Source: Klebsormidium nitens (taxonomy: Eukaryota; Plantae; Klebsormidiophyceae). Taken from it: a DNA stretch of 64,000 nucleotides. The notes beneath the pieces were generated by a model. It did not search any database. It saw only the letters and a program-made list of their open reading frames with translations, and was not told where the DNA came from. Below are positions 746 through 40,136 of this stretch, one piece after another; the stretch's first letter is position 1, and the number at the start of each line of letters is the position of its first letter. The position numbers and the translations under genes are program-made. Location: NCBI GenBank assembly GCA_000708835.1, contig DF237340.1:1-64000 (forward strand), in the 5' to 3' direction.

Positions 746-749
746 GGTC
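746..749. other. Left target-site duplication GGTC of element 1
   Basis: attagGGTC|TGCCGTG; identical 4-mer at 16746-16749. Confidence 0.85.
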
Positions 750-877
750 TGCCGTGCGCTACTCGGCTACTGCCGGTCCTCATGGGGTCCGGCGTTACGC
801 ACCGTAGATTGGCTCAGACCCAAAGCTAGGACAAATTAAAAGTCCCCCTTCAGCTATTCCATACAAGCCGTTCCACT
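750..877 (-). repeat. Element 1 repeat B2 (128 bp, 3'-terminal)
   Basis: Direct repeat of 1453-1580 with 1 mismatch (acaAatt/acaGatt). Confidence 0.97.
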
Positions 878-1450
878 AGCAACCATGCACAGGTTCTACA
901 GGACATGATGGGCAAAGGGATAGCTGGTTTGGTACTCGCTTATAACCTCTCAAGCATTACACATGCCCGGTGATTCCTCATGCTCATGTTGCTTCGGCTC
1001 CAACAAAGCCACATGCTCCGGCTCGCTCATGCTATCCTCACCATGCAATTGGCCGACAGGATCGCCACGCTCGCACGCAATGCTGTTGAATCAGGCTCAG
1101 AGAAGAGGAAGCTCGGGCGCCATTTGCTTGAATCAAGAGAGAGACTTGCAACTTTAGGAATGACACATCCGGTCGCAAAGTTCGCACCTAGTGTCACTCT
1201 AACCGTGCTGCACTAGCCTAGTCTCAGACTACTGTACAGCCTAAGCCCTAGCTCCGGCTAGTCTCGTTATGGTTTGAACTCGGCCGATGGTGACATTTGG
1301 CGCGGTTCCTCCGGCAAGCCTAGCCTAGTGTACATCAAATATAGGATATACTCTAGGCTATAGCCTATGTCTGCCGGGCCTTCCTACGCTGCTCCGGCCG
1401 CGGGTGCGCGCGCGCCGCGTCCTCCGGCACGCCGCTGGTCCGGCATGGCA
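878..1450 (-). repeat. Element 1 repeat A2 (573 bp)
   Basis: Direct repeat of 16173-16745 (offset 15295), about 10 mismatches counted by eye. Confidence 0.97.
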
Positions 1451-1452
1451 GC

Positions 1453-1580
1453 TGCCGTGCGCTACTCGGCTACTGCCGGTCCTCATGGGGTCCGGCGTTA
1501 CGCACCGTAGATTGGCTCAGACCCAAAGCTAGGACAGATTAAAAGTCCCCCTTCAGCTATTCCATACAAGCCGTTCCACT
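1453..1580 (-). repeat. Element 1 repeat B1 (128 bp), abutting the PPT
   Basis: Copy of 750-877, separated from A2 by a GC dinucleotide (1451-1452). Confidence 0.97.
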
Positions 1581-1592
1581 TCCCCCCCACTC
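1581..1592 (-). promoter_or_regulatory. Polypurine tract (plus-strand primer site) of element 1
   Basis: Sense GAGTGGGGGGGA, just after the INT-PHD stop and directly abutting B1. Confidence 0.8.
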
Positions 1593-1623
1593 GCTGGCCA
1601 CGGCCTCCGTGGCTTCCGGCGAG

Positions 1624-2148
1624 TTATCCTTGCTGCGCGCCTTCCGCGCAGCTGGGGCACAACCATACTCCGGCCGGTACTTCCTTGACCGCCAGCTCCA
1701 AACACCCCATGTGGTACCCGTCCATACAGTAGTCACACAACAGCATGGCTCCCTGTCGGTTTGGGCTCTTGCACACTTGACAGACATGGCCCGCCGTCAC
1801 CGTGGTTAGGGTGGGATCGACCGCGGTGTCGATGTTGGGGTTATGGCACGGCGCGCAGTTCTCCAGGTGCTCTTTGAACAGGGTTCCGTCTGCCCCCTGC
1901 AACACCAACCGCCCGTTGGCCCCCACTTGGTAGACTTTGTAAGCCCCCCGCGTCACCGCGACGTCCGTCTTGTCCAGAGGAGCTCGCCGGAGGTAGACCA
2001 AGTCCCCGACTTCAAACTTCGGCTGGAACCTCGTCTTCCGGACGTGTTCGTACCGTCGTTGGTCTCGTTTCTGCGCCGCCAACAGGTTCCCCAGGGCTAA
2101 GGGGATCTCCCGCCGGAGGACTTCCGCCCGCTGCTCGCACGCCGTCGC
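1624..2148 (-). pseudogene. pol: Integrase C-terminus (SH3-like region) plus PHD finger, element 1
   Basis: FQPKFEVGDLVYLRR...; PHD CQVC...LLCDYC..GYHMGCL....VPAGVWLCPSC. In frame with 2149..4230 but separated by a TAG at 2149-2151. Confidence 0.9.
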
Positions 2149-4230
2149 CTACGTCTCTGGATCGTCGAAGTCCATCGGCTCTCCCACCAGTTGTTTAACC
2201 GCCTCGCCGGTGAGCATGGGATGCCGGCCGTAGAGGAGGTAGTAAGGGGAGTAGCCGTTGAGGGCGGTTTGGGGACTCATCCGGTACCCCATGGCGAGGT
2301 AGGGCAGCCACTCATCCCAGTTGCGCCGGTCGGCGTCGGTGCCGATTTTGGTTACCCCTTGGATGATGGAGTAGACCAACCGCTCCGTCAGCCCGTTGGC
2401 CTGGGGGTGGTAGCGCGATGTAGTCCGGTGGTCGAGGTAGAGCTTCTGGCAGAGGGTGTCGAACTCCCCCTCGAACTCCTTCCCGTTGTCCGTGAGGACT
2501 TCTGCGCATGCCCCAAATCGTGTTAGTATGCCAAGGAAAACCTCTGCCACCTTTGCTGAGTGTTTGCTCGGCAGGGCCACCAGCTCGCACCATTTGGAGA
2601 AGTGCTCGACGATGACCAAGACGAACCGCTTCTTTGTCCGCGTCATCAGCAGCGGGCCCGCGAAGTCGAGACTCCACCGGTAGCCTTGCCCCATGATTGG
2701 TAGACTCTGCATCCCCGACATCTTGACGTTGAGGCTCGCTTTGGTGCGTTCGCACTGTGGGCAGCTGGAGACGCCGTGGCTCACCGTGTCGTACATCCCC
2801 GGCCACCAGTATGCTCGCCGGAGGAGCTGCGCCGTGCGCTTCTCCCCCCAGTGGCCCGTGTAGTCGTGGATTTTCCGAACCACATTCAACCGCTCCGACG
2901 GTTCTGGCACAACGCGCTCTTCCCCCCCTGCCAGACGGCGGAGGAGGACGTCCTTGGATGCGGTTTCTGTTTCAACCCCCTCCTGGAGTCTGTGGAACGT
3001 TACCCCGCTGGCGAACCGGTAGGACGCTGCCCGGGCGCGAACCCGTCGTTCCTCCGGCTTACCCCAGGTTTCGCGGAGCCGGCCGGTGTTAAGGAACTCG
3101 AGGGTGTGCGCGTCTTCCCAGATGTCTGTGCGCGCGCGCGCCTGGTTCCCCCCCAGATCGCCGTCCGCCGGAACAGGGAGGTTTGTGTCCACCGCTCCGT
3201 AGTCGCTGGGGCCCGGGATGGGGAGTTCCGACGGCAGGTTCTCGTAGTCGTGGGTTCCCGGCTCGTAGACCTCCCCCCCGGCTTCTTCCATACTCAGGGG
3301 CTCGGCCCCCTCTCGAGGTTCTGTGGCCTCGCTGGCCTGCCAGGCTAGCAAGGCCGATGGTCTTGTCCCCCCCCCAGCCGCTTCCTCCCCGGCCGCCGGA
3401 GGATCCTCGTGGACTCGGGCGCCGGTTAAGTCGTCGGTCTCGGGCAGAGGGCTCCGGCTCAGGCCATCGGCGTTCATGTTGATGAGGCCCTTGCGGTACT
3501 TGACCTCGAACTCGAATTCCTGCAGCATCAACGCCCATCTTGCGTGCATGCCGGTTAAGTTTGGGCTTGTCATGAGCCACTCAAGTGGCCGATGATCAGT
3601 GTAGAGGATGAACTTCCGTCCATACAAGTACACTCGGAAGTACCTCACACCCCAGACTGCCGCCAAGCATTCTCCGGCGTAACTGCTATAGTTACTTTCT
3701 GCCCGGTTGTTGCTCCGGCTGGCATAAGCAACCACTCTCTCCTCCCCAGCATCATCTCGCTGTTGCAGAATGGCACCGCACCCAGCGGCACTCCAGTCTG
3801 TGTGCAACTCGTAGTCACGGGAGGGGTCGGGTCTCACCAGAAGTGGCGCGCTTGTCAGCATCGTCTTCGGGGAATCCACCGCCGTCTTGCACTCCTCCAG
3901 CAGGTCTCCTAGGAAATCCACATCCTTTTTTAGCAAGTCGTTTAGCGGCCGTGCCACTGCGCTACACCCCTTTAGGAACTTCCGGTAGTAGTTCACTATG
4001 CCCAGGAACTGCTTAACCGCCGTCACACTGGTGGGGTAGGGGATGCGCTGAATGGCCTCCACTTTGACCGCTCCGGGGTTTGAGACCGACTGGGTTGACC
4101 AAGTGCCCAAGAAAGGGAATCTCGGGGAAGAGAATGCGGATTTTCCGCGGGTGTACCTTGATGTTGTGCCGCCGTAGCTCCTGGAACACGGCCCGCAGCG
4201 CCGCCAGGTGGTCGGTGAAGCCACGCGCAT
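2149..4230 (-). pseudogene. pol: RT connection, RNase H and integrase core, element 1
   Basis: RH: ELHTDWS..., GECLAAVW, LYTDHRPL. INT: HDYTGHWG..CPQC, then WSLDFAGP / LTDNGKEF / NGLTER (D,D,E). Frameshifted relative to RT near 4070. Confidence 0.93.
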
Positions 4231-5398
4231 GGACGCTGATGTCGTCGATGAAAGCGCGCGCCACCTTCCGCAGCTGCCGCAGGACCCGGTCCATCAGCCG
4301 CTGGAACAGCGCCGGCGCGTTCTTGGGCCCGAAGGGGGTCCGCAGGGGCATGTAGATGTCGTCGTGCCCCCAGAACGCCAGCTTCCACTCGTCCCCCTCC
4401 CTGATGCGGATTTGATGGTAGCCCATCCGCAGGTCCAGGGTGGAAAAGCAGTCGCTCCCCCCCAGGTCGTCAAACAGCTCGTCGGCCACCGGCATGGGGT
4501 ATTTGTCGGGGACGGTTTTGTCGTTGTGGGGCCGGTAGTCCCCGCACATGCGCCGCTCGGTCCAGTTTCCTTCGGCGTCCTTCTTGCGGGGCATGACCGT
4601 CGCTGCCACGAAGGGCTCTTTGACCCCCGGCGGCAGCTTCAACGGCGCGATCAGCTTGGCAGCCAGCCGCTCCTCAACGTAGGCCTTTAACAGCTCCGTC
4701 TCGTAGGGGGAGTACCGTCGGCGGGGGCTCCAGATGGGTTTGTCGTCCGTAAACTCCACCTCGAATTCCACCCCGTCGATCGCTGTGTCGCTGAGGTCGT
4801 AGATGGACCAGGCGAACACATCCGACATCTCCTCCAAGAGTTCCTTGACTGCCTCCCGTTGCTCCGGCTGTAGCCCCGGCCAAATCTGCTCGTCACCCCA
4901 CTCAAACGGTTTCTCCGACCCCTTTGCTCCGAATTGGCTCGCCCCTTTCTCTGCCGGTGCCTTCCCTGCCGCTTGCGCCTGCAGCTTTGGCACTATCTCT
5001 CTTCCTCCTTCGGCAAGTGACCGCAGCCCCTCTAGGCCACTCCCCTTACCGTCCTTTCCTTCAGCCTTGTTGTTGACCGGGTCAGGCTCCCGGCGTTGCT
5101 CTTGCGAGCCCTTGGTGGGCTCTCCTCCTGCGCCTTCCTCCGGCGCCGCCCGTCTTCCAGAGACTGCAACTCGCCCTAGGGACCCCCGGCCCCTCTCTCC
5201 TTCTCCTTCCGCAGCCGATGTGGCCTCTCCCCGCACTGATCCGTTCTCTGAAATTTCCGGGCTCCTACCGTTTTTACCGTTTTTCCCCTTCTGCCCCCCC
5301 CCCCAGCTGCGTGTAGACGCTCCGGCGGCGCGCCAGCTGAGTTGGCCTGTGGCGGTTTTGTTGAGGATGACCCGCCTGAACACCCTTAGTGCGGGGGC
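4013..5398 (-). pseudogene. pol: Reverse transcriptase, element 1
   Basis: RRMCGDYRPHN, PDKYPMP, FSTLDLRMGYHQI, PFGPKNAPALFQRLM, AFIDDI. Confidence 0.93.
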
Positions 5399-5418
5399 TT
5401 AGGGGCCCCCGCGTCCCT

Positions 5419-8400
5419 TCAATCTTCATCGTAGTTGAGGACCCGCCAGCGGCGGATCTCCTTGCACAACCAATAGAAAGCGCGAACGTCAATCGCTGCT
5501 CCCACCAACCTCCGGCGGTTGGCTTCGGTCAACCCTGGTGCCGCGGTTGACCCTGGAATGAGGCCCATTATCCGCTCTCGTTCGTTGGCGTTGGGCTCAT
5601 CCCACTCCCGCTTGTTGCGGTCGTATCTCATGCCAGGCCCGGGGCGATCAGGCCCCTGGAAACGGAAGGCGTATGAACCAGGCGTTGCGACGAGGGTGGG
5701 GAAGACGCGGATTGGCTCACCGGCGACGTTCATCGGAAAGTAACCCCGAACCCTTGGGTCGTCCTCCAGGGCACTCTGCACCGTGAGGAAGGGCTCCAGC
5801 ACGTCCCTGGCTTCAACCTTGTTCATCGCTTGACCGCAATCGTACTCGTCGTAGCGAGCCTGAATCAGGGGTCCCGGCGCTAAGTTAGTCCAGAAGGTGC
5901 GCACCCTGTGAGCCGCAGAACCCAACTTAGCCGCGTCAATCAGAATTCCCTGCCCTGGTTGTCCCCCGCAGATGGCGTCCAGCTGCTCAAACCCCCACCG
6001 CGCGGGTGGAGAGGGGTGGTCACTTGCGTCGACCATCTCGAAGATGAAGCCCACGTCAAACCCCCATGGACGTTGGATTTGCTGAAGCGTGTCCAAGATG
6101 CGCCAAGCCTCAACGATCAGGCCTGACCGATCATCTTCCAACCCCAAAGCTTGGCGGTTGGCGCGGGAGAAGCCTTGGCAGGGGGAGGAGATAGTTACCA
6201 GATTGATGGGGTCTTGGCACTCGGAGCCGACGGCCCGCCGAAGCTCCCGCTCGCCCACCTCCCGGATGTCCCACGGCATGGAAGACTGCGTGGTGTGGAA
6301 CGCCTGGGGGCCCAGCTGCTCCGGGTATCGGTGGTGCAGATCCCGCAGCCTGGTGCCGAAGGCGATGCGCGCCCCCGGGTCGTTCTCCACGTAGAACAGC
6401 CGCTTGATGTAGAGGCCCGCCCGCAGGAGGCCCTTCAACTCCGCGCCAATGCCGCCGAAGAGCAGCATGACGGTGATGTACAGGCCCTCCGCAAAGATGG
6501 GGCTGAACGTGGGGACGCTGTTGAGCCCCACCGTCTCCCGGTAGTAGGCGGTGCGGCTGCCGATAACGCTCAGCTCCTGGCCCACCGGCGGTTGCGTAAG
6601 CAGGCCCTGGGGAAGGCCGTCCCAGGGTGCGTCGGCGGCCGGAGGGACCCCGTCCTCCAGGGCGTCGGGATCCGCCTCGGCCACCGGAGCTATCTCGTCC
6701 TCCCCGACCTCCACCACTGGGGGCTCCCTCCGGCGCTGATTCTGCATTAGAAGGAGATCGTCCATCTGGGGGAAATCCCTGTTTCGGAAGTTCCCGATCC
6801 GTTCCCAGTTGCGCTCCATCCAGAACTGCTCCTCCAGGGAGCGAGGATGGACAGCCAGGAACTCGTACAGCTCGCGGTAGTAGATGTGGCTGGTCTGCAG
6901 TCGGTAGTCCCAGCCCGGGGGTGGCTCCGGCCGCCCCCACTCATCCTGCCGACGCATGTAGTTGAGCGCCGGAGGAGGGTAGCCCTCTAGGCTACCCCAC
7001 AGGGGTGACACCCCATGCACCAACTCTCTGTGTGCCACCTCCTGGGGGTCAACTGGTCCCGCCGGATCAGGGATGCCCGCAAGTAGCTTAGAGAGGTGGG
7101 TGTGGCAACTGACCAGGGTCCGCTTGAACGCCGGCTGGAAGCCCCGTCGTTCTTCCCTGCTGACCACCAGGCCAGGGCGCGCCAGCAGGTACCGCGGAGT
7201 GTCCACCGAGTGCTGCATGTCGTTGCGGGTCTGGCGCCGGAGGCACGTCACGATGTTCCGCACGTGCACCGAGTTGTGGCGCTGCGCAGCGCCGTTCGCC
7301 ATAACCTGCTCCAAACGTCGTGCGGTGGAGTCAGCTTCTCCACCACTGAGGCCCAAGCGCGCCGCCCTAGGGCAGACCTGCACCATGTCCTCTAGCCTTA
7401 AGGCCCTCCTTTCCCGTACACTCCAGTCTAACGCCTGGTGTAGCTGGGCCTCCCAACTGCGCACTGACTCCATCACCGCGAACTCCTCGTTGTGAAAGTC
7501 CAGCCACGCCAAGTACACCAGGATGAGGGTGTAGATTTGGGCCAGCTCCCGACGGCGCTGAACCATCTCGGGATGCCACTCCGGCAACTTCCACTGCCCA
7601 AACAGAGAGTCCTCCAAGTCCGTTGCAAGCCGGTGAAGTCGCGCCCTCTCCTCGTCCCAGTTAGAGCGGCTCACCGCGGAGCGCCCAACTTGGCCCGTCG
7701 CGATGTACTCCAACCACCAGATCCACCGCTCGTCCATTGGGTATGGGGCCACGAAGCGGAAGTCGGGGTCGTCCCTGTAGTAAACCCCATGCCACCCTTC
7801 ATGCTCCACCGCCACTACCGGCGCTGGGTCCCCCAGCCGCTCCAGCTCCATCTGCCCGACGGGTTCTAAGTCGGGCAGGCTGTCGGGCGTGCTGCTCCGG
7901 CTACTGTCAGGGCTGGCCATCTCGAGGAAGTCTGGCAGCTCGTTCAGGTCTGGGATGCTCCCCGCCGAAGAAACTACCCCGCTCTCATCCTCCGAAACTA
8001 AATCCGGCAGGCTTTCCAGTGGGGTGGGGGCCCGCTGCGGCCCGTACACTCTCCATCTGTCTACCCCCCCCTGGCGGAGGAGCATGGAGTTGTAGAATAC
8101 TTGGGGCATGTGCCGTGCCCCGGTTTCTCGCTCATACCGGATGGGTATGAAGCCTTCGGTATTTCCGGCGCCCTGTGGCCCTTCCCGCCAATGGAGCCGG
8201 TACCGGAACTGCTCTCGCCAGGCATCGACAATGCCGCCCAAAGTCCAGAGGACGACATTGCCCACCAGAAAGTCGTACGGTGCGGCCGTGATGACCGCGC
8301 GTACCTTCAGGACGGTGTCGGTTTTTGTCCCGGGGTTGAACCGGAACACCAGGGGCTCGCGTGTGACGCCGAACATCGCCGACACTTTGTCGTCAGCCAA

Positions 8401-9069
8401 GCCCAGGCGCACGGCGTCCTTGATGACGTCATCGTCTGTGAGGCCGAGCTGGGCTACCCCGGGTTTGCCGACGAGGAGGGGCATGGCGCCGGTGTCGAGG
8501 ATGGCGACCCCACGCAGGGGCTTGCCGTTGATCAACACCTCGCTCCTCGTGTTGTGGAAGATGGGGGCGCGCACGCGCTCGCGCGCCCGGTTCCCGCGGT
8601 ACGCTGGTAGGTTGCGTACCTTCTCCACCAGTGTTGCCCGTGCCGCCGGCTCCAACAGCTCCAGGATGGGGTCGAGGTTGCAGGGGCACATGGCTGAGTA
8701 GGCTTCCACCGGCATGGCGATGCTTGCGCCGGTGCTGTGGACGGGCGCCGTGGGCTGAGGGGTGCCGGCGCTGCCATGTTGGGAGGCTGGGGCGTTCTGT
8801 GCAGGGGCTGCCCGGCCCGCCGGAGGAAGTTCCACACTTGGCCCGGACCCCCCTGAAGGGTGACCGGGCCCAGACCCCGGGTCGTCATCCTTGGGGTCCC
8901 GCTGGGGCTGAACTCCCGGGTGCTCGTCCGGCGGGGGAATCCCGTACTGCCTCTTCCTCAGTTCTTCCTCACCGGGTTCCGGGGAGGAGGGCGGGGTTTG
9001 GGCGCCAGGTGTGCGACGGATAGTCGCCTCCTGCAAGACGTCCTGGAATTTCTTGAGGTGTTCTGGCCC
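5419..9069 (-). CDS. Aspartic protease, unknown ~550-aa region and C5 cytosine DNA methyltransferase, element 1
   Basis: PR: AILDTGAMPLLVG (~8470-8520). DNMT ~5419-6490: I LLFGGIG, II YVEND, IV SSPCQGFS, VI FEMV, VIII HRVRTFW, IX ERERIMG, X RRLVGAAID. In frame with 9070..10932 across a TGA. Confidence 0.88.
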   Translation of the reverse strand, partial: GPEHLKKFQDVLQEATIRRTPGAQTPPSSPEPGEEELRKRQYGIPPPDEHPGVQPQRDPKDDDPGSGPGHPSGGSGPSVELPPAGRAAPAQNAPASQHGSAGTPQPTAPVHSTGASIAMPVEAYSAMCPCNLDPILELLEPAARATLVEKVRNLPAYRGNRARERVRAPIFHNTRSEVLINGKPLRGVAILDTGAMPLLVGKPGVAQLGLTDDDVIKDAVRLGLADDKVSAMFGVTREPLVFRFNPGTKTDTVLKVRAVITAAPYDFLVGNVVLWTLGGIVDAWREQFRYRLHWREGPQGAGNTEGFIPIRYERETGARHMPQVFYNSMLLRQGGVDRWRVYGPQRAPTPLESLPDLVSEDESGVVSSAGSIPDLNELPDFLEMASPDSSRSSTPDSLPDLEPVGQMELERLGDPAPVVAVEHEGWHGVYYRDDPDFRFVAPYPMDERWIWWLEYIATGQVGRSAVSRSNWDEERARLHRLATDLEDSLFGQWKLPEWHPEMVQRRRELAQIYTLILVYLAWLDFHNEEFAVMESVRSWEAQLHQALDWSVRERRALRLEDMVQVCPRAARLGLSGGEADSTARRLEQVMANGAAQRHNSVHVRNIVTCLRRQTRNDMQHSVDTPRYLLARPGLVVSREERRGFQPAFKRTLVSCHTHLSKLLAGIPDPAGPVDPQEVAHRELVHGVSPLWGSLEGYPPPALNYMRRQDEWGRPEPPPGWDYRLQTSHIYYRELYEFLAVHPRSLEEQFWMERNWERIGNFRNRDFPQMDDLLLMQNQRRREPPVVEVGEDEIAPVAEADPDALEDGVPPAADAPWDGLPQGLLTQPPVGQELSVIGSRTAYYRETVGLNSVPTFSPIFAEGLYITVMLLFGGIGAELKGLLRAGLYIKRLFYVENDPGARIAFGTRLRDLHHRYPEQLGPQAFHTTQSSMPWDIREVGERELRRAVGSECQDPINLVTISSPCQGFSRANRQALGLEDDRSGLIVEAWRILDTLQQIQRPWGFDVGFIFEMVDASDHPSPPARWGFEQLDAICGGQPGQGILIDAAKLGSAAHRVRTFWTNLAPGPLIQARYDEYDCGQAMNKVEARDVLEPFLTVQSALEDDPRVRGYFPMNVAGEPIRVFPTLVATPGSYAFRFQGPDRPGPGMRYDRNKREWDEPNANERERIMGLIPGSTAAPGLTEANRRRLVGAAIDVRAFYWLCKEIRRWRVLNYDED

Positions 9070-11587
9070 TCAGTTAATGGGTGCCACGGTTTTGCTATAC
9101 ACCTCCCGCCCAACCCGTATGGCAATTTCTTGGGCCACCTGTTCCCATGGCACCATCCGATTTTCGACATTGCAGGACCCGGCAGGCGCTGCGTCAAAGA
9201 CGGCTGAGCCTGAGGGGACCGCCAGAGGGACTTCTGGAGCGACGTCTGTCCCCGACGCTAAAGCCCCGCCCCCTCCTAGATCTTTTCCCCTGTCTCCCGG
9301 GCTGTCTCCCTTCCCGCCGGCTTCGTGGCCCTCGCCGTTACTGCCCGTCCGTTCCCCGGTAGGCTTCCCCGGGGCTAAGGGTGTTCCTTCTGGCGCCGGC
9401 GGTTTGGCGGGCGCTGGAGGCGGGGGTGGCGGCGGTGGCGGCGCCAGTGGAGAGGAACTGGGCCCCACATGGACCGTCTGCAGGCCCGGGTCCTCAACGT
9501 TGGCCATGAAGGCCTCCACGGCTGCGGGGTCAGCCGTCGGTCCGAAGCTGGGGACGGTGTGTCCGCTGCTCACTGCTCCGGCCGGCCCAAAACTCCGTTC
9601 AGAAAAAAAGAGAAGAATATGGGCGGCTTCCGTATCCGGGTGTTGAACGAAGTCAGGAAGCTCAGAGAAGACTCCCATATACGAGGAAGAGGGTGATCGC
9701 ACCTTCCCATTTTGTCCTTGTGCGGCCCCCTCTTCAAAGTCTTCAGGGGGGGTGGAGTAACCATGCTGGTCCTCCCCGCCCAGGAGTGCTGCCGCCTCCA
9801 ATGGCGCAACCGCCTTCGCGGCGGGCTTTCCCCCCGTCTTCCGTGTGGGGCGCTGTTTGCGCCCCTCACCCGCCGTGTCCGCTGGGCCTTTCCCTGAGCT
9901 AGCCGGGGGTGGGATTTCGGCAGGCGGGCTGGGGGCTCGTCCTCCGGCCGTCTGCGTTAGGCCCCCTTCCTCCGGCCCGGTTTCCGCCGGTGGGTTGGGC
10001 TCCTTGGTCCCTTCCGGCTGCTCCTCCTCGGACGGGCTCGGTTTACGTTCCGGTTCCCCCTCCGGCGGCCACGGGGCCCGCTCCACCCCTTCGTCCGGCT
10101 CTTCCCCCGGCACGTCGTTACTCACCGCTCCCCATCCTCCGAGGGCCATCGTGTCGTTCATGAGCTGCCCGTCGTACATGTCTTCCTTGTGCCCAATGGG
10201 AGGTCGCCATCCCAGGTAGTAGGTGTTGGCCTCCCGCCGGAGGAGCACTTGCAGCTGGCTCAGCTTCTGGGGGTGCGCGTTTCCGCTCCACTCCAGGCCT
10301 GCGACGCGCTCCAGGGCGATGTTGAGGGCGATCTGCTCACGGACCTGGGACTCCGAGGGAAACCTGTTCCCAGCGGGCGGAAGTCCATAGACGAACGGTC
10401 CCCCTTCCTTCCAGAACCATCGGGTTTGCGCCTCGTAAGAGGCGGGGTAGGGAACGGTGGAGAACTTGGGGTAGTCGGCCGCACGCGGCGCTCCGGCCTC
10501 GTCCAGCCACCGCTTCCAGACTGGGTCCTCCCCGACTGCTACTTCCTTCTCCGGCGGCACTGTCGGGCGCCCAGCTGCTGCTTCGGCGGCCGGGTCGAAG
10601 TCGTCACCTGCGTAGGAGTACCATGGCCGGCGGTGAGTGGCGCTGTTCTCCTCCGCAAAGCCCGCCCGCTTCGCATACGCGATCTCTACCACCCTCCCGC
10701 GCGCCCATATGGGGTCGATGAGGGATTCCCGGCGCTCAGGGGAGGCATGGGATAGGGCGAAAATGAGGAGGCCCCGGTACTCGTCCCGATAGTAGTCGGG
10801 GGACTGGTCCACCAGGGCAGGAAACTCCCGCCGGTCCGCCTCACGTTGGTAGAACGGATCCTCCGTGGTGGGCACCGTCTTGAAGACCTCGTCGAACCGC
10901 ACCACCCAGTCTTCCTTCTCCAGGCCCGCCACTCGCGCTTGTGCCGCCTGCAGGTCGGGGTCGTTGTGGTTGAAGGCTCCCGGAAGGGGTCCCCCGAGGT
11001 ATTCCCAGGGTTCTCCTTGGTTTCGGCTTCCGCCTCCGGCTCTCCTCCAGGACCCCCCGGCTCCGCAGTTTGCTGCTCCTCCGGCGCGTCTTCAGGGCGA
11101 ACCTCAGCTTCCCCTACTCCCGTGGCTTGCTGCCCCTTGGCCTCTTCTTTGCCTTCTTGGTTGGCGGGGCGTCCACCACCGCCGTGCCCTCCTTCTCGTG
11201 CTCTGTTTCCGCTTTTTCTCCCGCCGGAACAGGCCTCTTACCCCGCTTCTCCTTGACTGCTGACTTAGGCTCTGAAGGTTCCTCCGGCGGCGCCTTCTTC
11301 TTGCCCTTGTCCTGAGTGTCGGTTTTCTGCCCAGTGGCTGCAGGGAGTGGTTTCTCCGGGGGCTTGGGAACAACCTTCTTCTCCTCCGATTGCTTGCCAC
11401 CCTTCTGTGCCGAGGTGGATTTCTCCACCTTGACCTCCTGCAGGTTCACGGGCATTCCGGGGCTGATCCAGGGGTTGGGGTGGAAGGGCGGGACTTTGGA
11501 TTTAACCGATCCTGATCTTGCCCACCCCTCAGCTGTGAGCGCGGCTTGTGCGCTTTCAGCTGATCCCGGTGGGAAGATCCCCCGTGA
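9070..11587 (-). pseudogene. Unknown protein-coding cargo between gag and PR, element 1 (includes 620-aa ORF 9070..10932)
   Basis: Long open frames with GC-rich coding-like composition, in frame with the flanking ORFs across TGA stops. Probable frameshift(s) near 11000-11120. No domain recognised. Confidence 0.6.
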
Positions 11588-14500
11588 TCAAAGGAATTGC
11601 ATTTTAGGGCGCTTGGGGGGAGGGGTTGGGGTGCGGGTGCGTTCCCCCCCCTTTTCCTCGCTGGATGACGGCGTGGCTTCCTCGTCGTCCTCATCCGGCG
11701 TAAGGTACCCCCCCAACTTGGCCAGCCCGGCCTTGGCGTTAAGCTTTTTGCGCGCTGATTCGAGGCGGGCGTGCTCTTGGTTTGCCGTTTCAGGGCTCGC
11801 CTGCGCCAGTTTGAGCAACAGGTTATCGACGTTCTCCTCCAGCTCCCGCACCTCGATCCGAATCACTGATACGTCGAAAATCTCCACACCAGGCTCAAAG
11901 GTTAGGATGGGGCCCTCCTCCGGCGCCTTCCTCAGCCGGGCCTCCAGCTTCCTGGCCCGCCGGAGGACCTCCTTGCTCCCGTTGACACCCTCAATCGCCC
12001 CGGCTTGACGCAAAGAGCTGGCCAGCTTCCTGAGGCCGTCGATGCGCACCTGCTCGCCGGTGGGGTCGAGTCGAAGGGTGGGTGGAGGCTCCACACTGCG
12101 GGACCGCTGTCGCTGTTGGTGTCCTGTTGACAGCTCTCCGGCGCCCTCGTCCGCTGGGTCGTTCTTGGCCCGCCGTGGACGCTTGGTTTGGGGGCTGGCT
12201 GACCGGGCGCGCCGTTCTTCTCCGGCCACCTGTCGCTTCTCCCGCCCCGACCGCCGCGCCAGGATGGGCTTGTCCTCGCCCTCGCTGGCCTTACCGCCCA
12301 GGCCCTTCCGGCTTGCGGTTGGAGAAGGCTTGGAGGCACCGCCCCCTTTTGTCTCCTTGGGGCCCGGTTGCTTCGGCCGAGGGGGTGCGCCGATTGGCAC
12401 CACCCGTGGGAGATTTTCCCCTTTCACGTGGGTGGGGGCGGGGGACACGCGCTTGTCGGGCTCCGTGGAGTGCCCCCCCCACTGCCCGTGTGGCACGTCG
12501 TAGTCGTCGACCTTCCAAGTTTCCCGGTAGGTGGTGTCCTCCCGGTCGTCATCGTCGCGCACATACTTCTGGTACGCGTAGAGGGGGTCCGTCCCCCAGG
12601 CAGCGTACAGATTGGCCTTGTACTGTCCCCACGGGATGACGCGCCCCCTGTTGTGGGTGTCGCCCTTCTTCAGCTCAAGCTCCTCCTCCGGCAGGGGGCC
12701 CACCTGGATAGGCGTGTTGTCGTCCCAGCCACCGTGCCACGCGTGGAGGAGTCGCCGGTGGAACAGCACCATCTCAGACAGGTCCGGCTTGGGCGGGGCC
12801 TTCTTGGACGCTGGCCGCCCGTGCAGCTCGCGGCAGTACTCAAGGATGGACCGACCCGCATAGTGCAGGGCCAGCAGGACGTAGCATTGCGTCCTGGTGG
12901 GCCGCTTGGCGAACATGAACTCCGCTGCCCGCGTGACGTACTCCCGGCCCCAGTGGGTTATGTAGCCCGCGAACTCGTCGTTGTGCATGACGGCCCAGGA
13001 TTGTCGCTCCCGCCAGTCTCGTGGACTCCAGCACATGCACCTGAAATCCGGGTGCCAAGGAGGGTGACCGGTTTTGCCCCCTTGGAGGCCGGCCTTGCTC
13101 TCGTCCTGGGCTGCGTGCGCCAGCATGTAGTTCAGGTGCTGGATGAACGCCATCTGCCCCTTGTACCGCGGGGCCTGCATCGGGGGCAGGTAGATGTCCA
13201 GTTTGTGCGGGGGGAGATGCGGGTCGTCGTCCACCACCGGGTCGGGGTACTCCTCCATGGCCCAGGTGTGGTTGTCGGCGTGGGTGGGATCGGCTGCGGC
13301 CAACCACTGATCCTTGAACGGACCAGCGACGATGTTGAACCAGTTTTCGCCGAGGGTTATGACGTCGTCAAACTTGCTGATGACGGTCTCTCCTCCCTGT
13401 GCTCCGCCAGCTCCTCCGGCCGCACCGCCTGCTTCTTCCTCCGGCTCGTCCTCGCCTGACTGCTCCACTGACCCCGAGCCCGCCTGCTCGGACTCCTCCT
13501 CCACGCTCTCACGCTCCGAGTCATCCGCCTCCCCCTCCGCGTCTTCGTCTCCCTCCTCGACGCCGGGCTGCTCCACATCCTCGGGGTCATCTTCGTCCCC
13601 CTCGCCGTCGTCATCGTCAGCTCCGCCAACGCAGCGCATGGGCTTCGCAGGACCGAGGTAGGACAGGGGGATGGAGGACGCTTGGACCTCCAGACTGTAG
13701 GCCGGAGGAAGGGTCTCGAACGGGGCTGCCCGTTTAACCTGCACCTCCCGTTGGGGCCCGACCTTGGGGTCATTCAGCATGTGGACCTGCACCCCTGCGT
13801 TCTCGAGGGACTCGATCCCCTGATAGCGGGGGTCGTTGGGGGAATACTCCCCAAAGGAAGGGGGCAGCTTCTGGGCGACCAGGGGCGTTGGCTCAGGCTC
13901 GGCGGGGCCTTCGGCTTCCTCCGGCTCAGCTCTGGTCTCCCCCCCGGCCTCCTCAGCTGCTGCGACAGGGCGATCGCCATGTGGGCGGAAGGCTGGGGGT
14001 GGGCCGCCCTTCCGCAGACGATCCTCCTTGGCTCTGGCCGCCAGCCGGTCCTTCTCCCCGCGTGCCCGCGGTGCCGTGGTTGTCTCGCGCTGCGCCTTGG
14101 TTGACGCGCGCACCTCCGGCAGCTCGTGGTCTTCGTCCGCCAGGTAGACGCCCATGTAGGGGACGCCTGGCTGCTCGATGACGGCCGACCACGCCAGCTC
14201 AGGGTCGAACTCCTCCGTGGCTGGCGCGTTGTGCTCCACCGCATCGGCGGCGTAGGCATGCTTGGGGGCTCCGCGGTTGCTCCGGCCGCCCGCACCAGGT
14301 TTGCCCTTGCCGCTGTCGCCGGACCCGCGCCACTTCTCCGGCCGCTTCTCGGGAATCGCCTCCCAGCACTCGTGGGACTCGTGGGAGTCCCTACGCTTGC
14401 AGTGCTTGCAGACCGCCCCTGGCATCCGCGGCCCCTTTGCCTCCGGCTTCTTCTTGCACTCCGTGCGTGTGTGGCCGTACTCGCCACAGTTGAAGCAGTT

Positions 14501-15714
14501 GCCCTTGAACCCCGTTCCCAGTGCCGGAGGCTCCATGGCGGCTAAGGCTTGCTTGGGTTTTCCCCGGCCTCGCCGCTCTCTCTCTTTGGGACCGCGTTCT
14601 GCTCGGGGTTTGTTGGACTCTCTCTGAGAGCCCGGGGACTTGCTGGAGAGGCTCAGGTCCTGCAATTTGGAGGAGAGGGGTTTGCCGGTGGTTTTGTCGG
14701 CCCGCTCCAGCTCACGTGCATGAAGAGCGTCCTCCACCTGCCTGGCCTCTTGCTCCAACTTGTCTAGGGTACAATCGGCAACAGCCCACTTGAGAACATC
14801 GTTCTCTATCGCACGCCGCACCTCCCCCCTAAGCGCTTTCAACGCTTTCTCAGTCACCTCCCTGCCGATGGTGGGCTTACCGTTCTTCCGGCAGAGCTCC
14901 CGCAAGAGGTGAAACGTGGCGTGAGTGCTCCTCCCCGCCGTGTACTTGAAGTTGAGGTATTCGCCCAGCGTCTGAGCGGTGTTCTCCGGATAGGTGGTCT
15001 GCAGGAAAGCCCAGGTTTCGGTCATGAGCGTGGGGTCCCCCTTTGCTACCTTCCGTGGCCAGGAAGGCACTGGGCCTGGCGGCGCGTCCGTGTTCGCCTT
15101 CCACTGCTCATGCCACTTCTCTGCGAGAAGTTTCTCCTCTACCTTCCGGTTTTCAGCCTCCACTTCCTCCCGCGCCTTCGCATTCTCTTCCAGACGCGTA
15201 CGGAATTTATCCTGGAGAACGTGGTATGCGTCCCCCTCACAAAGATCACTGCAAACTTGTCTTCATCAGTGAGAGTGGCCGCCGTAGCACTGCGGCGAGA
15301 CCGGATAAGCTGCAGGCGATTCTCATAAGTGAGCCGGAGGTCTGTGACACTCTGGCCCCCTACACGCCCACTAAACTTTCCACCGAAGCTCCCTGTGGAG
15401 CTACCCCCTGTCTCCTCCATATCCCAGCTGTCTTCCCAGTCCTCAACTCCTAAGAAGGAGACTGCTACGGCCGGAAGCACAACAGTGTTGCCCTGCTCCT
15501 CTGCCGATTCCGACGCACTGGTGGAAAGAGGGGTTTCAGGGATGATCTCACCAGCTGGGTTTTCTTCAGGTGAACCTTGACCACCCTCGGATGTCTCCGC
15601 TGCCGCCGTGGACTGTCCCTCACCCTTCGCTCCCTGCCCAAACCTCCGAAGAAAGTAAGGCGGGTCCCCTTCAGCCCCGCTGCTTTCCGCTGGCTGATCA
15701 GAGGGAGGCTGCAT
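11588..15714 (-). pseudogene. gag: Gag with zinc knuckles plus long C-terminal extension, element 1
   Basis: ATG at 15714. Probable 1-bp loss in a G run near 15232 joins ORFs 15139..15720 and 11588..15163. Knuckles CFNCGEYGHTRTEC and CKHCKRRDSHESHEC. Confidence 0.82.
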
Positions 15715-16152
15715 AAGCAATCAAAGAGTTTGCAAAATGCCCCTTACACCCTTGGTTCCTTGTAGCCAAAGGTTAAAACCTTACTCCCACACTCAGAGAT
15801 GTGGTTTCAGCTGCTCCGGCGCCCGTATTACGCCAACTGCAGGAGCTCCCGAGGCCCCACCCACTGCTTACTCAAGCAATGCTGGCTACCCCTGAGCTGT
15901 GCTAGCTCAATCAACCACGTGGGCAGTCCGCCGGAGGACCGCAGACACTGGTTGGAGCTGAGGGTGGCTCACCGTTGTGGCTTGCCGCTCGGACCGAGAA
16001 CCCTTGATCCCCGTACTCCTTGCACCCCCACTTAGCTTGAGCACCCAAGCAAACTGCTTGCCGCTGCAAAGAGAAAAATGATCCTCCAGGTTTGGACCAA
16101 TCAAAGTTCCCCCTTGCTAACCTTGCGAGAAGCACCTAACAGCCACCACCCA

Positions 16153-16172
16153 TCATTCCTAAAGTTGCAAGT
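16153..16172 (-). promoter_or_regulatory. Primer-binding-site position, self-complementary to A repeat (not a recognisable tRNA PBS)
   Basis: Abuts A1. Perfect 20-bp reverse complement of 16439-16458 (also 1144-1163). Confidence 0.8.
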
Positions 16173-16745
16173 AGCAACCATGCACAGGTTCTACAGGACA
16201 TGATGGGCAAAGGGATAGCTGGTTTGGTACTCGCTTATAACCTCTCAAGCATTACACATGCCCGGTGATTCCTCATGCTCATGTTGCTTCGGCTCCAACA
16301 AAGCCACATGCTCCGGCTCGCTCATGCTATCCTCACCATGCAATTGGCCGACAGGATCGCCACGCTCGCACGCAATGCTGTTGAATCAGGCTCAGAGAGA
16401 AGGAAGCTCGGGCGCCATTTGCTTGAATCAAGAGAGAGACTTGCAACTTTAGGAATGACACATCCGGTCGCAAAGTTCGCACCTAGTGTCACTCTAACAG
16501 TACTGCACTAGCCTAGTCTCAGACCCTTGTACAGCCTAAGCCCTAGCTCTGGCTAGTCTCGTCATGGTTTGAACTCGGCCGATGGTGACATTTGGCGCGG
16601 TTCCTCCGGCAAGCCTAGCCTAGTGTACATCGAATATAGGATATACTCTAGGCTATAGCCTATGTCTGCCGGGCCTTCCTACGCTGCTCCGGCCGCGGGT
16701 GCGCGCGCGCCGCGTCCTCCGGCACGCCGCTGGTCCGGCATGGCA
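16173..16745 (-). repeat. Element 1 repeat A1 (573 bp, 5'-terminal)
   Basis: Direct repeat of 878-1450. No B sequence on either side. Confidence 0.97.
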
Positions 16746-16749
16746 GGTC
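16746..16749. other. Right target-site duplication GGTC of element 1
   Basis: CATGGCA|GGTCattg; matches 746-749. Confidence 0.85.
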
Positions 16750-18578: not shown

Positions 18579-19523
18579 ATGAGTTGGAGATACAATTTGC
18601 GTAGCGGTCCTGAGTTTCCACACCGCGACCCGAACGTCGGACTTGGCAGTGACACTGGCCTTGATAACATTGATTATAACCAAGGCAGTAGTTCGAGTCC
18701 GACCCCTCATTCGCCGCGCGAATTATTGCACGATTCCGGGCACTCTGATTTTGCACCGCAGCTTGTGCGTGCATCATACTTGCCGACAGGCGCGCCCGCC
18801 TTTGTCGAGCCGTTTGATATAGCCGAATTAGACACCATGTCGCTACTGAATGTACAGCATGGTACATGACTCTTTACGGGACTCCCGGACGGCCCAAGTA
18901 TCTTGCACTTGCGCCAGAATTATGCGACGCTCAAGACGGAGCTCAAGCTCAAGCCGAATTCTGAGCTTATCAACGATAATGACAGGTTCAACCTGCTCAT
19001 GAAGTTCTTAGCCGGGGGGGCACGCGATCAGGCCGCCCACCTCGAGCGTGAGATGCGCGAAGAACTGCGCACCCGGAATGCTGCTCAGGCCGACTTATAT
19101 CTGCGGAATAAGACGGCATATGAGAAGGCGAAGACCGATTATGACGCTCTGTCAGCCGAAGCTAAGGCAGCCGCGACCGAACCGGTCCGGCCGGAGCCGC
19201 ATGTGGACGCAGAGGTCTATGATCAGCCGGTCGAGAAGTTCTGGGCTATGATGGAAAAGCTTTATCCAGAGAAGTCAACGACTCGGATGGATGAGTTCCG
19301 CTATTTTGCGCGACGCTCCGAGGAGACTATCGCTAGCCTCGTACAGCGCATGCAGTCATTGAAGCATGCCCTCGACCGCCCAGAGGAGATGGCCGTATTC
19401 AAGCTCATAGGAGCTATGCCCCGCCACTTGGGCGAGGAAGTTACGCGCCAGTTGAACGCCACAGCCATGGAGCCTGAGGAATGGACCATTGAGCTCGTGG
19501 GCCGGGTTGCAATTAAGCCTTGA
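18579..19523 (+). pseudogene. gag: Gag capsid region, element 2
   Basis: ORFs 18579..18869 and 18903..19523 are in the same frame, split by a TGA. Helical gag-like sequence, frameshifted into the CCHC ORF near 19520. Confidence 0.7.
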
Positions 19524-21579: not shown

Positions 21580-22459
21580 NNNNNNNNNNNNNNNNNNNNN
21601 NNNNNNNNNNNNNNNNNNNNNNNNNNNNNNNNNNNNNNNNNNNNNNNNNNNNNNNNNNNNNNNNNNNNNNNNNNNNNNNNNNNNNNNNNNNNNNNNNNNN
21701 NNNNNNNNNNNNNNNNNNNNNNNNNNNNNNNNNNNNNNNNNNNNNNNNNNNNNNNNNNNNNNNNNNNNNNNNNNNNNNNNNNNNNNNNNNNNNNNNNNNN
21801 NNNNNNNNNNNNNNNNNNNNNNNNNNNNNNNNNNNNNNNNNNNNNNNNNNNNNNNNNNNNNNNNNNNNNNNNNNNNNNNNNNNNNNNNNNNNNNNNNNNN
21901 NNNNNNNNNNNNNNNNNNNNNNNNNNNNNNNNNNNNNNNNNNNNNNNNNNNNNNNNNNNNNNNNNNNNNNNNNNNNNNNNNNNNNNNNNNNNNNNNNNNN
22001 NNNNNNNNNNNNNNNNNNNNNNNNNNNNNNNNNNNNNNNNNNNNNNNNNNNNNNNNNNNNNNNNNNNNNNNNNNNNNNNNNNNNNNNNNNNNNNNNNNNN
22101 NNNNNNNNNNNNNNNNNNNNNNNNNNNNNNNNNNNNNNNNNNNNNNNNNNNNNNNNNNNNNNNNNNNNNNNNNNNNNNNNNNNNNNNNNNNNNNNNNNNN
22201 NNNNNNNNNNNNNNNNNNNNNNNNNNNNNNNNNNNNNNNNNNNNNNNNNNNNNNNNNNNNNNNNNNNNNNNNNNNNNNNNNNNNNNNNNNNNNNNNNNNN
22301 NNNNNNNNNNNNNNNNNNNNNNNNNNNNNNNNNNNNNNNNNNNNNNNNNNNNNNNNNNNNNNNNNNNNNNNNNNNNNNNNNNNNNNNNNNNNNNNNNNNN
22401 NNNNNNNNNNNNNNNNNNNNNNNNNNNNNNNNNNNNNNNNNNNNNNNNNNNNNNNNNNN
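21580..22459. other. Assembly gap (880 N)
   Basis: Run of N. Confidence 1.
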
Positions 22460-22669
22460 ATGATCCAGAAAGCTGATGGCTCTTGGGATGAACCCACCGC
22501 TCTGGAACGCGAGCGCGCTATGGGCTTCATGGACGGGACCACTCACGTCTGTCCCTCCATCTCTGAGGCGGATCGGCGACGGATCCTGGGAAGCACGATG
22601 GACATGCACAGCCTCCACTTTCTGGTTGGCAGCATCCACTGCTTCCAGGCAGCCTTTTTCACCGATTGA
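22460..22669 (+). pseudogene. DNMT C-terminus (motifs IX-X), element 2
   Basis: WDEPTALERERAMGF...EADRRRILGSTMD aligns with element 1 WDEPNANERERIMGL...EANRRRLVGAAID. Confidence 0.88.
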
Positions 22670-24207: not shown

Positions 24208-24233
24208 GCACTGCCGGCTATTATCGGCGCTAT

Positions 24234-26609: not shown

Positions 26610-26611
26610 GC

Positions 26612-28661: not shown

Positions 28662-40136
<11,475 letters not shown>

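What the first reader, a model, noticed from the sequence alone, without database searches (positions are those of the whole stretch)
1443..1460. Conserved 18-bp palindromic att-like junction (CA-GC-TG) that also defines both element ends
Seen: element 1 sense GCACGGCA-GC-TGCCATGC and element 2 (26602-26619) GCGTGACA-GC-TGTCATGC. Both are imperfect palindromes (7/8 arms) and share 14/18 nt, while the rest of A and B shows no similarity I can align. The element termini are the two halves of this site without the GC. Established: retroviral 3' processing leaves CA-3'OH with a 2-nt 5' overhang; IS3/IS30/IS21-family DDE transposases act on circle junctions with 2-3 bp spacers; foamy-virus integrase has been reported to cut palindromic LTR-LTR junctions. 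Inference: nicking after CA on both strands of CA^GCTG would give canonical processed ends directly from a circle.
Basis: partly seen in the sequence, partly recalled or inferred. Interest (0 to 1): 0.88.

Follow-up and report, generated by a model that had tools for sequence, protein, structure and literature searches.

The report
Back-to-back integrase ends inside a retrotransposon LTR
The 18-bp palindrome is real: it is where the two integrase-recognised ends of a Ty3/gypsy-type retrotransposon of the alga Klebsormidium nitens lie back to back inside its long terminal repeat, which makes every inserted copy a circular permutation of its own reverse transcript.

Summary
Both 18-bp sites exist as quoted (7/8 arms, 14/18 shared). 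The window is Klebsormidium nitens. Both elements are broken Ty3/gypsy-type retrotransposons (RT, RNase H, DDE integrase, PHD finger, DNMT-like domain) with the order A1-internal-B1-GC-A2-B2.

Element 1 (750-16745, minus strand) ends in TG...CA, and these ends are the two half-sites. It is flanked by a 4-bp duplication, GGTC. Element 2 shows only its right end, because A1 is absent from the window.

The same CA-NN-TG junction, always with a 2-nt spacer, sits at the B1|A2 boundary in 30 loci. The spacer is GC in all eight GC-rich loci read (Klebsormidium, its relatives and Closterium).

New here: a polypurine tract abuts B1 in 28 of 29 loci, and a Tf1-like self-priming site abuts A1 (20 nt in element 1). 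Reverse transcription should therefore make an LTR equal to B-GC-A, with the palindrome inside U3. The integrase must use these internal ends, and A2|B2 is the joint of the transcript's outer ends.

The repeat order was noted in passing for KnitGypsy-Dnmt3 in 2018. The junction, the primer sites and this mechanism were not described in any paper I could search.

The parts
746..749 (.). Target-site duplication GGTC, copy beside the B2 end of element 1
   Evidence: ggtc directly outside both termini
750..16745 (-). Element 1, whole integrated copy. Sense order is A1-PBS-internal-PPT-B1-GC-A2-B2, with TG...CA termini
750..877 (-). B2 of element 1 (base 877 is shared ambiguously with A2)
   Evidence: 749-877 matches 1452-1580 at 99.2%
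878..1450 (-). A2 of element 1
   Evidence: 877-1451 matches 16172-16746 at 98.3% over 575 nt
1443..1460 (.). The 18-bp junction of the finding: end of B1 (...CA), spacer GC (1451-1452), start of A2 (TG...). Arms 7/8 complementary
1453..1580 (-). B1 of element 1
1581..1592 (-). Polypurine tract (sense gagtggggggga) directly upstream of B1
1642..5098 (-). pol of element 1 (RT, RNase H, integrase zinc domain, rve core, PHD region). Broken: 1 frame change and 3 in-frame stops relative to an intact 72%-identical relative
5425..8820 (-). Large ORF region with a weak C5 DNA-methylase match (E 0.001, below Pfam's cut-off). Homologous to the 1151-aa ORF of L001
14053..15438 (-). gag-like region with a weak CCHC zinc knuckle. 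2 frame changes between matched stretches relative to L001 orf1
16153..16172 (-). Self-priming primer-binding site: 19 nt directly after A1, plus the last base of A1, complementary to 16439-16458
16439..16458 (-). Site inside A1 complementary to the PBS, taken as the predicted start of R (the transcript 5' end). The same site lies in A2 at 1144-1163
16172..16745 (-). A1 of element 1
16746..16749 (.). Target-site duplication GGTC, copy beside the A1 end of element 1
18585..27306 (+). Element 2, the visible part. The right end is ...gtgaca at 27306; the 5' end (A1, PBS) is not present in the window
18585..22666 (+). gag (CCHC) plus DNMT-type ORF region of element 2. Broken: 2 frame changes and 2 in-frame stops relative to an intact relative. 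Interrupted by an 880-N assembly gap
23113..26385 (+). pol of element 2 (RT, RNase H, integrase, PHD finger). Broken: 2 frame changes. Two of its ORF pieces (RT; RNase H-integrase) are 100% and 99.8% identical to a K. nitens protein record
26470..26477 (+). Polypurine tract (agggggga) directly upstream of B1 of element 2
26478..26609 (+). B1 of element 2
26602..26619 (.). Second 18-bp junction: B1 end, GC (26610-26611), A2 start. Arms 7/8 complementary
26612..27173 (+). A2 of element 2 (no A1 partner in the window)
27174..27306 (+). B2 of element 2

Best explanation
The palindrome is the pair of integrase-recognised termini of a Ty3/gypsy-type retrotransposon, placed back to back with a GC spacer inside the U3 part of the LTR that reverse transcription makes.

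The order of events I infer is as follows. Transcription starts in the middle of A1. The RNA 5' end folds back on the site just after A1 and primes minus-strand synthesis, as in Tf1. The polypurine tract just before B1 primes the plus strand. The product is an ordinary LTR-internal-LTR DNA in which each LTR is B-GC-A. The DDE integrase then uses the internal ...CA / TG... pair of the 5' LTR rather than the outer LTR ends. The outer ends (A-right and B-left) are joined to each other, either before the cut (a 2-LTR-circle-like form) or after it.

The inserted copy is therefore A1-internal-B1-GC-A2|B2, flanked by a 4-bp duplication. It is a circular permutation that still carries one intact LTR, and so all the information needed for the next round.

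Shown by sequence: the anatomy, the termini, the duplications, both primer sites, the conservation of the junction and the variability of the A2|B2 joint. Inferred: cleavage after CA on both strands, the joining step and its timing, and why the 5'-LTR site is the one used.
For: Domains RT, RNase H, Integrase_H2C2, rve and PHD are present and no tyrosine recombinase is found.

Element 1 has TG...CA termini equal to the half-sites and the duplication GGTC. Exact 4-bp duplications are also seen in L068/L030, L041, L042 and L077, in L029 by eye, and in Closterium L088.

A run of at least 5 G lies within 15 nt upstream of B1 in 28 of 29 loci, against 1.1% of random positions.

In element 1 the PBS next to A1 is complementary over 20 nt to a site 287 nt into A; 500 shuffles gave at most 9 nt. 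That helix is present in both the MFE and the centroid fold. The matching complement is 14 nt in Closterium and 9-15 nt in five of the nine AT-rich loci where A1 is seen.

The junction has a 2-nt spacer in 26 of 26 loci and in 4 further loci. The spacer is GC in all 8 GC-rich loci.

The A2|B2 joint varies where it can be read: exact length in 5 insertions, 2 nt shorter in 3, and 2 nt longer in 1. This is expected of a joint made anew at each insertion and not of a templated one.

The arrangement recurs in independent assemblies, including a 1.9-Mb Closterium contig where the A copies are 99.8% identical.
Against: No unintegrated DNA form, transcript end or enzyme activity has been observed; everything after reverse transcription is inferred.

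A free choice between the two identical sites of a 2-LTR circle predicts equal numbers of A-B-GC-A-internal-B copies. None was seen among 21 visible 5' ends, against 31 3' ends of the B-GC-A-B type. An extra asymmetry must therefore be assumed. One possibility is that the 5'-LTR site becomes double-stranded first.

Most related loci come from short-read metagenome contigs, where repeats can collapse. The PBS complement is short or missing in some decayed copies. Element 2 lacks its 5' end.
Confidence: 0.6

Rival explanations
1. The element circularises to a unit-length circle, the B|A palindrome is the circle junction formed in that way, and the integrase nicks after CA on both strands to give the linear, processed element.
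For: The cutting geometry is correct and the junction is conserved. Copies of the form A-internal-B with a single B exist in about 21 related loci. Integrase cleavage of palindromic LTR-LTR junctions has been reported for retroviruses (PMC1180852 and PMC1905944, found).
Against: The junction is present, uncut, inside every integrated copy with two B repeats. A unit circle cut at the site cannot yield A-internal-B-GC-A-B. The PPT and PBS place the ends of the reverse transcript at B-left and A-right, so B-GC-A is templated and not made by ligation. Single-B copies can arise secondarily: L030 (single B) and L068 (B-A-B) are the same insertion, with the same flanks.
Confidence: 0.12
2. A model with reverse transcription only. 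As proposed for DIRS, PAT and Ngaro elements, the internal B1-GC-A2 region serves as a bridging template. Template switches then build a linear cDNA whose physical ends already are A-left and B-right (plus the GC), and the integrase does only ordinary end processing. No circle or end joining is needed.
For: The same A1-internal-B1-A2-B2 order is found in tyrosine-recombinase elements, where the internal junction is thought to restore the ends from a shorter transcript (PMC7192593; PMC4157794). The alternative permutation is absent, which a replication-determined architecture would explain. The 2-nt spacer equals the dinucleotide that integrases usually remove.
Against: I could find no route by which the RNA downstream of A2 (that is, B2) would be copied, given a PBS after A1 and a PPT before B1. 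The A2|B2 joint differs by -2, 0 or +2 nt between insertions, which is unlike a templated sequence, although subfamily inheritance is not excluded.
Confidence: 0.2
3. A DIRS-like mechanism. A tyrosine recombinase recombines a circle at the B|A junction with the target, and the integrase domain is irrelevant.
For: The repeat architecture is the one that defines PAT and Ngaro elements.
Against: No Phage_integrase or other recombinase hit appears in any ORF of 200 aa or more at E <= 0.01. An intact rve integrase is present in relatives. The copies have TG...CA termini and 4-bp target duplications.
Confidence: 0.03
4. An artefact or secondary rearrangement: mis-assembly, a nested insertion of a solo A-B unit next to an A-internal-B element, or a local duplication.
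For: The K. nitens assembly is a draft with N gaps in the window. Assembler collapse is visible in some metagenome and Logan contigs.
Against: The same order with the same 2-nt spacer is found in three K. nitens families, in ENA, JGI and Logan contigs and in a long Closterium contig. One duplication flanks the whole unit. The A1/A2 and B1/B2 pairs are 98-100% identical.
Confidence: 0.03

Closest known systems
KnitGypsy-Dnmt3 of Klebsormidium nitens (de Mendoza et al. 2018, PMC5890265)
   Same: Same organism. Gypsy-type pol with a DNMT-type domain upstream of RT. The legend of their Fig. 4c states that the repeat structure is that of a DIRS element while the domains are those of Gypsy. The two window elements are members or close relatives of this group.
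   Different: That paper, as far as I could read it, gives only the A-coding-B-A-B cartoon remark. It does not describe the palindromic CA-GC-TG junction, the termini and duplications, the PPT and PBS positions, or any integration model. Element 1 is much larger (16 kb) and has extra unassigned ORFs.
PAT, Ngaro and DIRS tyrosine-recombinase retrotransposons with split direct repeats
   Same: The order A1-internal-B1-A2-B2, with the two termini abutted internally around a short spacer. A species-specific trinucleotide is reported at the DIRS junction (PMC7192593).
   Different: Those elements encode a tyrosine recombinase. These encode a DDE integrase, end in TG...CA and make 4-bp target duplications.
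Tf1/sushi and Tcn1 self-priming Ty3/gypsy elements
   Same: The sequence directly after the repeat is complementary to a site inside it, which is the predicted 5' end of the transcript. Self-priming is described for Tf1/sushi and predicted for Tcn1 in mosses (PMC6317226).
   Different: Those elements have ordinary LTR-internal-LTR copies and a chromodomain. Here the copy is permuted and the integrase ends in a PHD finger.
Abutted-end circle junctions of IS3, IS30 and IS21 family insertion sequences (from my own knowledge, not tested here)
   Same: Two inverted transposon ends separated by 2-3 bp form the preferred substrate of a DDE enzyme.
   Different: In those bacterial elements the junction is transient and is made by excision and circularisation. 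Here it is permanently encoded inside the LTR and is copied by reverse transcription.
Cleavage of the palindromic LTR-LTR junction of 2-LTR circles by retroviral integrase (PMC1180852, PMC1905944)
   Same: A DDE integrase acts on internal, abutted ...CA / TG... ends. A form in which the two LTRs are joined is needed.
   Different: In retroviruses the palindrome is the ligated U5|U3 joint. Here the palindrome lies within U3, and the joint of the LTR outer ends (A2|B2) is not palindromic.

Membership tests
Ty3/gypsy (Metaviridae-type) LTR retrotransposon | pol order RT, RNase H, integrase (zinc domain plus rve core), and gag with a CCHC knuckle | tested here: met
   Pfam hits in both elements and in intact relatives
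Ty3/gypsy (Metaviridae-type) LTR retrotransposon | The integrated copy is bounded by two complete, identical direct LTRs | tested here: not met
   The 5' end carries A only and the 3' end carries B-GC-A-B
Ty3/gypsy (Metaviridae-type) LTR retrotransposon | TG...CA termini and a short (4-6 bp) target-site duplication | tested here: met
   Element 1 GGTC; L068/L030 CCAA, L041 ACCT, L042 TTTT, L077 CTTT; Closterium AAAT
Ty3/gypsy (Metaviridae-type) LTR retrotransposon | PPT directly upstream of the 3' LTR and PBS directly downstream of the 5' LTR | tested here: met
   Met only if the LTR is taken as B-GC-A. The PPT abuts B1 in 28 of 29 loci and the PBS abuts A1
DIRS / PAT / Ngaro (tyrosine-recombinase retrotransposons) | Split direct repeats A1...B1-A2-B2 | tested here: met
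DIRS / PAT / Ngaro (tyrosine-recombinase retrotransposons) | Encodes a tyrosine recombinase in place of a DDE integrase | tested here: not met
   No such Pfam hit; rve integrase present
Tf1/sushi-type self-priming elements | PBS complementary to the start of R within the element's own LTR, not to a tRNA | tested here: met
   20-nt complement in element 1 against a shuffle maximum of 9, present in the folds. 14 nt in Closterium. No tRNA gene in the window to compare. The transcript start itself is not observed
Tf1/sushi-type self-priming elements | Chromodomain at the integrase C-terminus (chromovirus) | tested here: not met
   A PHD finger is found instead
KnitGypsy-Dnmt3 | K. nitens Gypsy element with a Dnmt3-type methylase in the polyprotein and DIRS-like repeats | tested here: inconclusive
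   Organism and repeat order are met. The DNMT hit in element 1 is below Pfam's cut-off (19 bits against 22). In element 2 the region lies partly in an N gap. Close relatives have clear hits. No reference sequence of KnitGypsy-Dnmt3 was available to compare
IS-type or retroviral circle junction as integration substrate | Junction of abutted ends is created by circularisation and is cut by the element's DDE enzyme | not testable with these tools
   The sequence shows the abutted ends, but they are templated inside the LTR. Cleavage was not observed

The most novel reading that the evidence does not exclude
A whole clade of PHD-finger Ty3/gypsy elements of streptophyte algae (Klebsormidium, Closterium and an unidentified AT-rich eukaryote) always integrates through a genome-encoded pair of abutted ends inside U3. 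A DDE integrase would then need a joined-LTR (circular or end-joined) intermediate. The split-direct-repeat architecture so far tied to tyrosine-recombinase elements would be a general consequence of placing the attachment site inside the LTR, whichever recombinase is used.
Probability: 0.45. Interest if true: 0.85.

Novelty: new variant of a known kind. Interest (0 to 1): 0.72.

Why it matters
LTR retrotransposons and retroviruses are taken to integrate from the outer ends of a linear DNA, and circular forms are regarded as dead ends. Here the primer sites and the inserted copies disagree about where the ends are. The simplest way to reconcile them is that a retroviral-type integrase uses internal, abutted ends, and that the outer ends must be joined.

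That would be a natural case of a DDE integrase depending on a joined-LTR form. It would link three systems: IS circle junctions, the disputed cleavage of retroviral 2-LTR circles, and DIRS-type elements. It would also explain how split direct repeats can arise without a tyrosine recombinase.

There is a practical side. LTR-finding software that expects LTR-internal-LTR will mis-annotate these elements, which appear abundant in the streptophyte algal and metagenome contigs sampled here.

Tried and rejected
**5' end of element 2.** Self-BLAST at word sizes 11 and 7, motif searches and searches for PBS complements found nothing. DNA homology to relatives starts only in gag. I conclude that the 5' end is missing or unassembled.

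**tRNA-type PBS.** There is no TGG-type site after A1 and no tRNA gene in the window, so I rejected it in favour of self-priming. Rfam gave no match.

**Literature.** Searches for split direct repeats with an integrase, permuted LTRs and PHD-finger Gypsy elements found only the 2018 figure legend. The REM1 paper is not held, and from citing papers REM1 differs.

**Symmetric 2-LTR-circle cutting.** Rejected as sufficient, because the alternative permutation is absent.

**Single-B copies as primary products.** Left open, because one is the same insertion as a B-A-B copy.

**A more distant PHD element (L091).** It shows no terminal repeats and is uninformative.

**Not done.** The host of the AT-rich metagenome contigs was not identified. 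No integrase structure was predicted.

- A note and search patterns in scripts contain a short motif that amounts to the commonest form of the termini in the AT-rich clade. It was used only to locate sites.
- In one search two adjacent natural pieces of element 1 were joined with the typed natural dinucleotide instead of slicing the window.

Full report
**Observation.** The two quoted 18-mers are in the window at the stated coordinates. Each has 7/8 complementary arms around a central GC, and they share 14/18 positions. They are the only two sites in the window with a CA-NN-TG core and at least 7/8 arms, but a Markov null gives 1.5 such sites per 64 kb. The palindrome alone is therefore not remarkable. 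What matters is that each lies exactly on a repeat boundary. Outside the junction, A and B of the two elements cannot be aligned.

**Anatomy of element 1.** Self-comparison gives these repeats on the + strand:
- 750-877 matches 1453-1580 (B, 99.2%).
- 878-1450 matches 16172-16745 (A, 98.3% over 575 nt).

Read on the minus strand, the order is A1-internal-B1-GC-A2-B2. The outer ends are TG... (16745) and ...CA (750), which are the two half-sites. GGTC lies directly outside both ends.

The ORFs carry a weak CCHC hit, a weak C5-methylase hit, RVT_1, RT_RNaseH, Integrase_H2C2 and rve. Against an intact relative, pol shows one frame change and three stops. This copy is dead.

**Anatomy of element 2.** On the + strand it has CCHC, RVT_1, RNase H, integrase and a PHD finger. 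The repeats are B1 26478-26609, GC, A2 26612-27173 and B2 27174-27306, and the right end is at 27306. No A1, terminal motif or primer site is found upstream. An 880-N gap lies inside it. Its genes are also broken.

**Organism and prior knowledge.** Two of element 2's pol ORF pieces (RT; RNase H-integrase) are 100% and 99.8% identical to a Klebsormidium nitens protein record on an 88-kb contig. De Mendoza et al. 2018 described KnitGypsy-Dnmt3 in this alga. In a figure legend they remarked that its repeats are arranged as in DIRS elements while its domains are those of Gypsy. My literature searches found no other treatment.

**Relatives.** The best protein hits are 72-74% identical in metagenome assemblies and lower in K. 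nitens and Closterium. Nearly all full-length relatives end in a PHD finger. I fetched 91 loci.

The order pol-B-NN-A-B recurs in 24 of the 80 JGI metagenome loci, which are AT-rich eukaryote contigs. It also occurs in:
- ENA contigs L001 and L003;
- a third K. nitens family, L086;
- JGI L089;
- Closterium sp. NIES-65, L088, on a 1.9-Mb contig with A copies 99.8% identical.

The Logan contig L084 shows the junction, but its repeats were collapsed by the assembler.

**Conservation of the junction.** In 26 loci the spacer is always 2 nt: GC in 12, AC in 8, GT in 3, and AT, AA and TA once each. Four further loci all have GC, so all 8 GC-rich loci have GC. The deviations occur in old AT-rich copies and are mostly single transitions from GC. 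Shares by column: the inner CA is kept in 23-26 of 26 loci and the inner T-G-T-C-A-T-G in 18-26 of 26. The outer arm positions vary between lineages. In Closterium only 4 of 8 arm positions pair. The constant features are thus the termini and the spacer, not the length of the palindrome.

**Where reverse transcription begins and ends.** A G-rich polypurine run ends at the first base of B1 in 28 of 29 loci, against 1.1% of random positions. In element 1 the 19 nt directly after A1, plus its last base, are exactly complementary to a site 287 nt into A. No shuffle exceeded 9 nt, and this 20-bp helix closes both the MFE and the centroid fold of the intervening RNA. Closterium has a 14-nt complement at the same relative place. 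Five of the nine AT-rich loci where A1 is seen keep 9-15 nt.

This is the arrangement known from Tf1/sushi self-priming elements (PMC6317226). By the standard scheme of LTR-element reverse transcription (established knowledge), the DNA made is LTR-internal-LTR with LTR = B-GC-A. U3 would be B, GC and the first part of A; R-U5 would be the rest of A.

**Consequence.** The inserted copies do not begin and end at the LTR's outer ends. They begin and end at the CA/TG pair inside U3. A1-internal-B1-GC-A2|B2 is what results if the outer ends (A-right, B-left) are joined and the DNA is opened at the site of the 5' LTR. A2|B2 is then the analogue of a circle junction.

In line with a joint made anew each time, it has the exact expected length in 5 insertions, is 2 nt shorter in 3 (a two-base overlap) and 2 nt longer in 1. 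The B1|A2 spacing never varies.

Exact 4-bp duplications flank element 1, four AT-rich insertions in the script tally, L029 by eye and the Closterium copy. Three more AT-rich insertions match at 3 of 4 positions. This points to DDE integration.

**Census and what stays unexplained.**
- 31 3' ends are of the B-NN-A-B type.
- About 21 show a single B.
- None of 21 visible 5' ends shows A-B-NN-A.

A free choice between the two identical sites of a 2-LTR circle would give both permutations, so the use of the 5'-LTR site needs a reason. One inference is that this site becomes double-stranded soon after the second strand transfer, long before the 3'-LTR site. The integrase could then bind and cut it first, and the outer ends would be joined afterwards.

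Single-B copies are ambiguous. L030 (single B) and L068 (B-A-B) have identical flanks, and their flanking DNA is 97% identical. Deletion between B1 and B2, or assembler collapse, can therefore produce them.

**Rivals.**
- A DIRS-style model using template switching only would explain the missing permutation. I found no path by which B2 would be copied, and the variable A2|B2 joint argues against templating. I give it 0.2.
- Tyrosine recombination is excluded by gene content, termini and duplications.
- An artefact is excluded by recurrence across independent assemblies.

**Comparison and novelty.** The elements work like Ty3/gypsy self-priming retrotransposons up to the end of reverse transcription. 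At integration they work like elements that use abutted ends: IS circle junctions, and the reported cleavage of retroviral LTR-LTR junctions (PMC1180852, PMC1905944).

They fail one defining feature of LTR retrotransposons, the pair of complete terminal LTRs. They also fail the defining gene of DIRS-type elements. The repeat order is already on record for K. nitens. The new points are the junction, the primer-site argument, the permutation logic, the joint heterogeneity and the spread to Closterium and another eukaryote. I rate this a new variant of a known kind.

**Caveats.**
- There is no direct evidence on transcripts, unintegrated DNA or enzyme activity.
- Many loci are short-read metagenome contigs.
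- The host of the AT-rich clade is unknown.
- The paper library is incomplete.

Noticed in passing
window 21580-22459 and 61343-61917: Runs of N (880 and 575 bases): scaffold gaps of a draft assembly. The first lies inside element 2, where relatives carry the methylase domain.
   Followed up: yes
window 9073-10932 (minus); L001 2562-4331 and 4390-6204: Element 1 and its 72%-identical relative are about 16 kb long and carry large ORFs of about 600 aa with no Pfam match between gag and the methylase-like ORF. Their function is unknown.
   Followed up: partly
window 5425-8820 (minus); L084 1945-5778; L003 841-3411: A C5 cytosine-methylase-type domain sits in the ORF upstream of RT. The hit is weak in element 1 (E 0.001) and clear in relatives (E 3e-8). 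This fits the published K. nitens methylase-bearing Gypsy elements.
   Followed up: partly
window 25570-26400 (+); P0003 residues 1125-1169: The integrase ends in a PHD finger, not a chromodomain, throughout the clade. This may be a chromatin-targeting module.
   Followed up: partly
L041, L055, L068 (right part of B, e.g. L068 near 13150-13176 and 13620-13650): In the AT-rich clade the right part of B holds two or three tandem copies of a unit of about 15 nt that ends in the terminal motif. Several candidate right ends therefore lie in a row.
   Followed up: no
L030 versus L068: The same insertion (identical flanks and 4-bp duplication, flanking DNA 97% identical) is present once with a single B and once with B-NN-A-B. 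The element itself is only 87-92% identical between the two loci.
   Followed up: partly
L084 and L085; L002: The Logan contigs L084 and L085 are circular permutations of each other. L002 runs from one element straight into the start of the next. Both are most simply explained by assembler collapse of A1 with A2 and are not evidence of circles.
   Followed up: partly
window 37531-38010 (minus): An ORF fragment matches the PI3K C2 domain (E 6e-7). It is probably an exon of a host phosphoinositide 3-kinase gene. The 28-64 kb part of the window has no ORF of 200 aa or more and looks like intron-rich host DNA.
   Followed up: no
window 51423-51480 and 56362-56419: A 58-nt direct repeat, 89.7% identical and 4.9 kb apart, of unknown nature.
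   Followed up: no
window 23242-23334: A 48-nt tandem repeat (1.9 copies, 86% matches) just inside the 5' bound of the pol region of element 2, upstream of its RT domain.
   Followed up: no
window 16750-18584: About 1.8 kb between element 1 and the first recognisable gag homology of element 2. It has no repeat, ORF family or similarity to relatives. It could be the untranslated leader of element 2 or unrelated DNA.
   Followed up: partly
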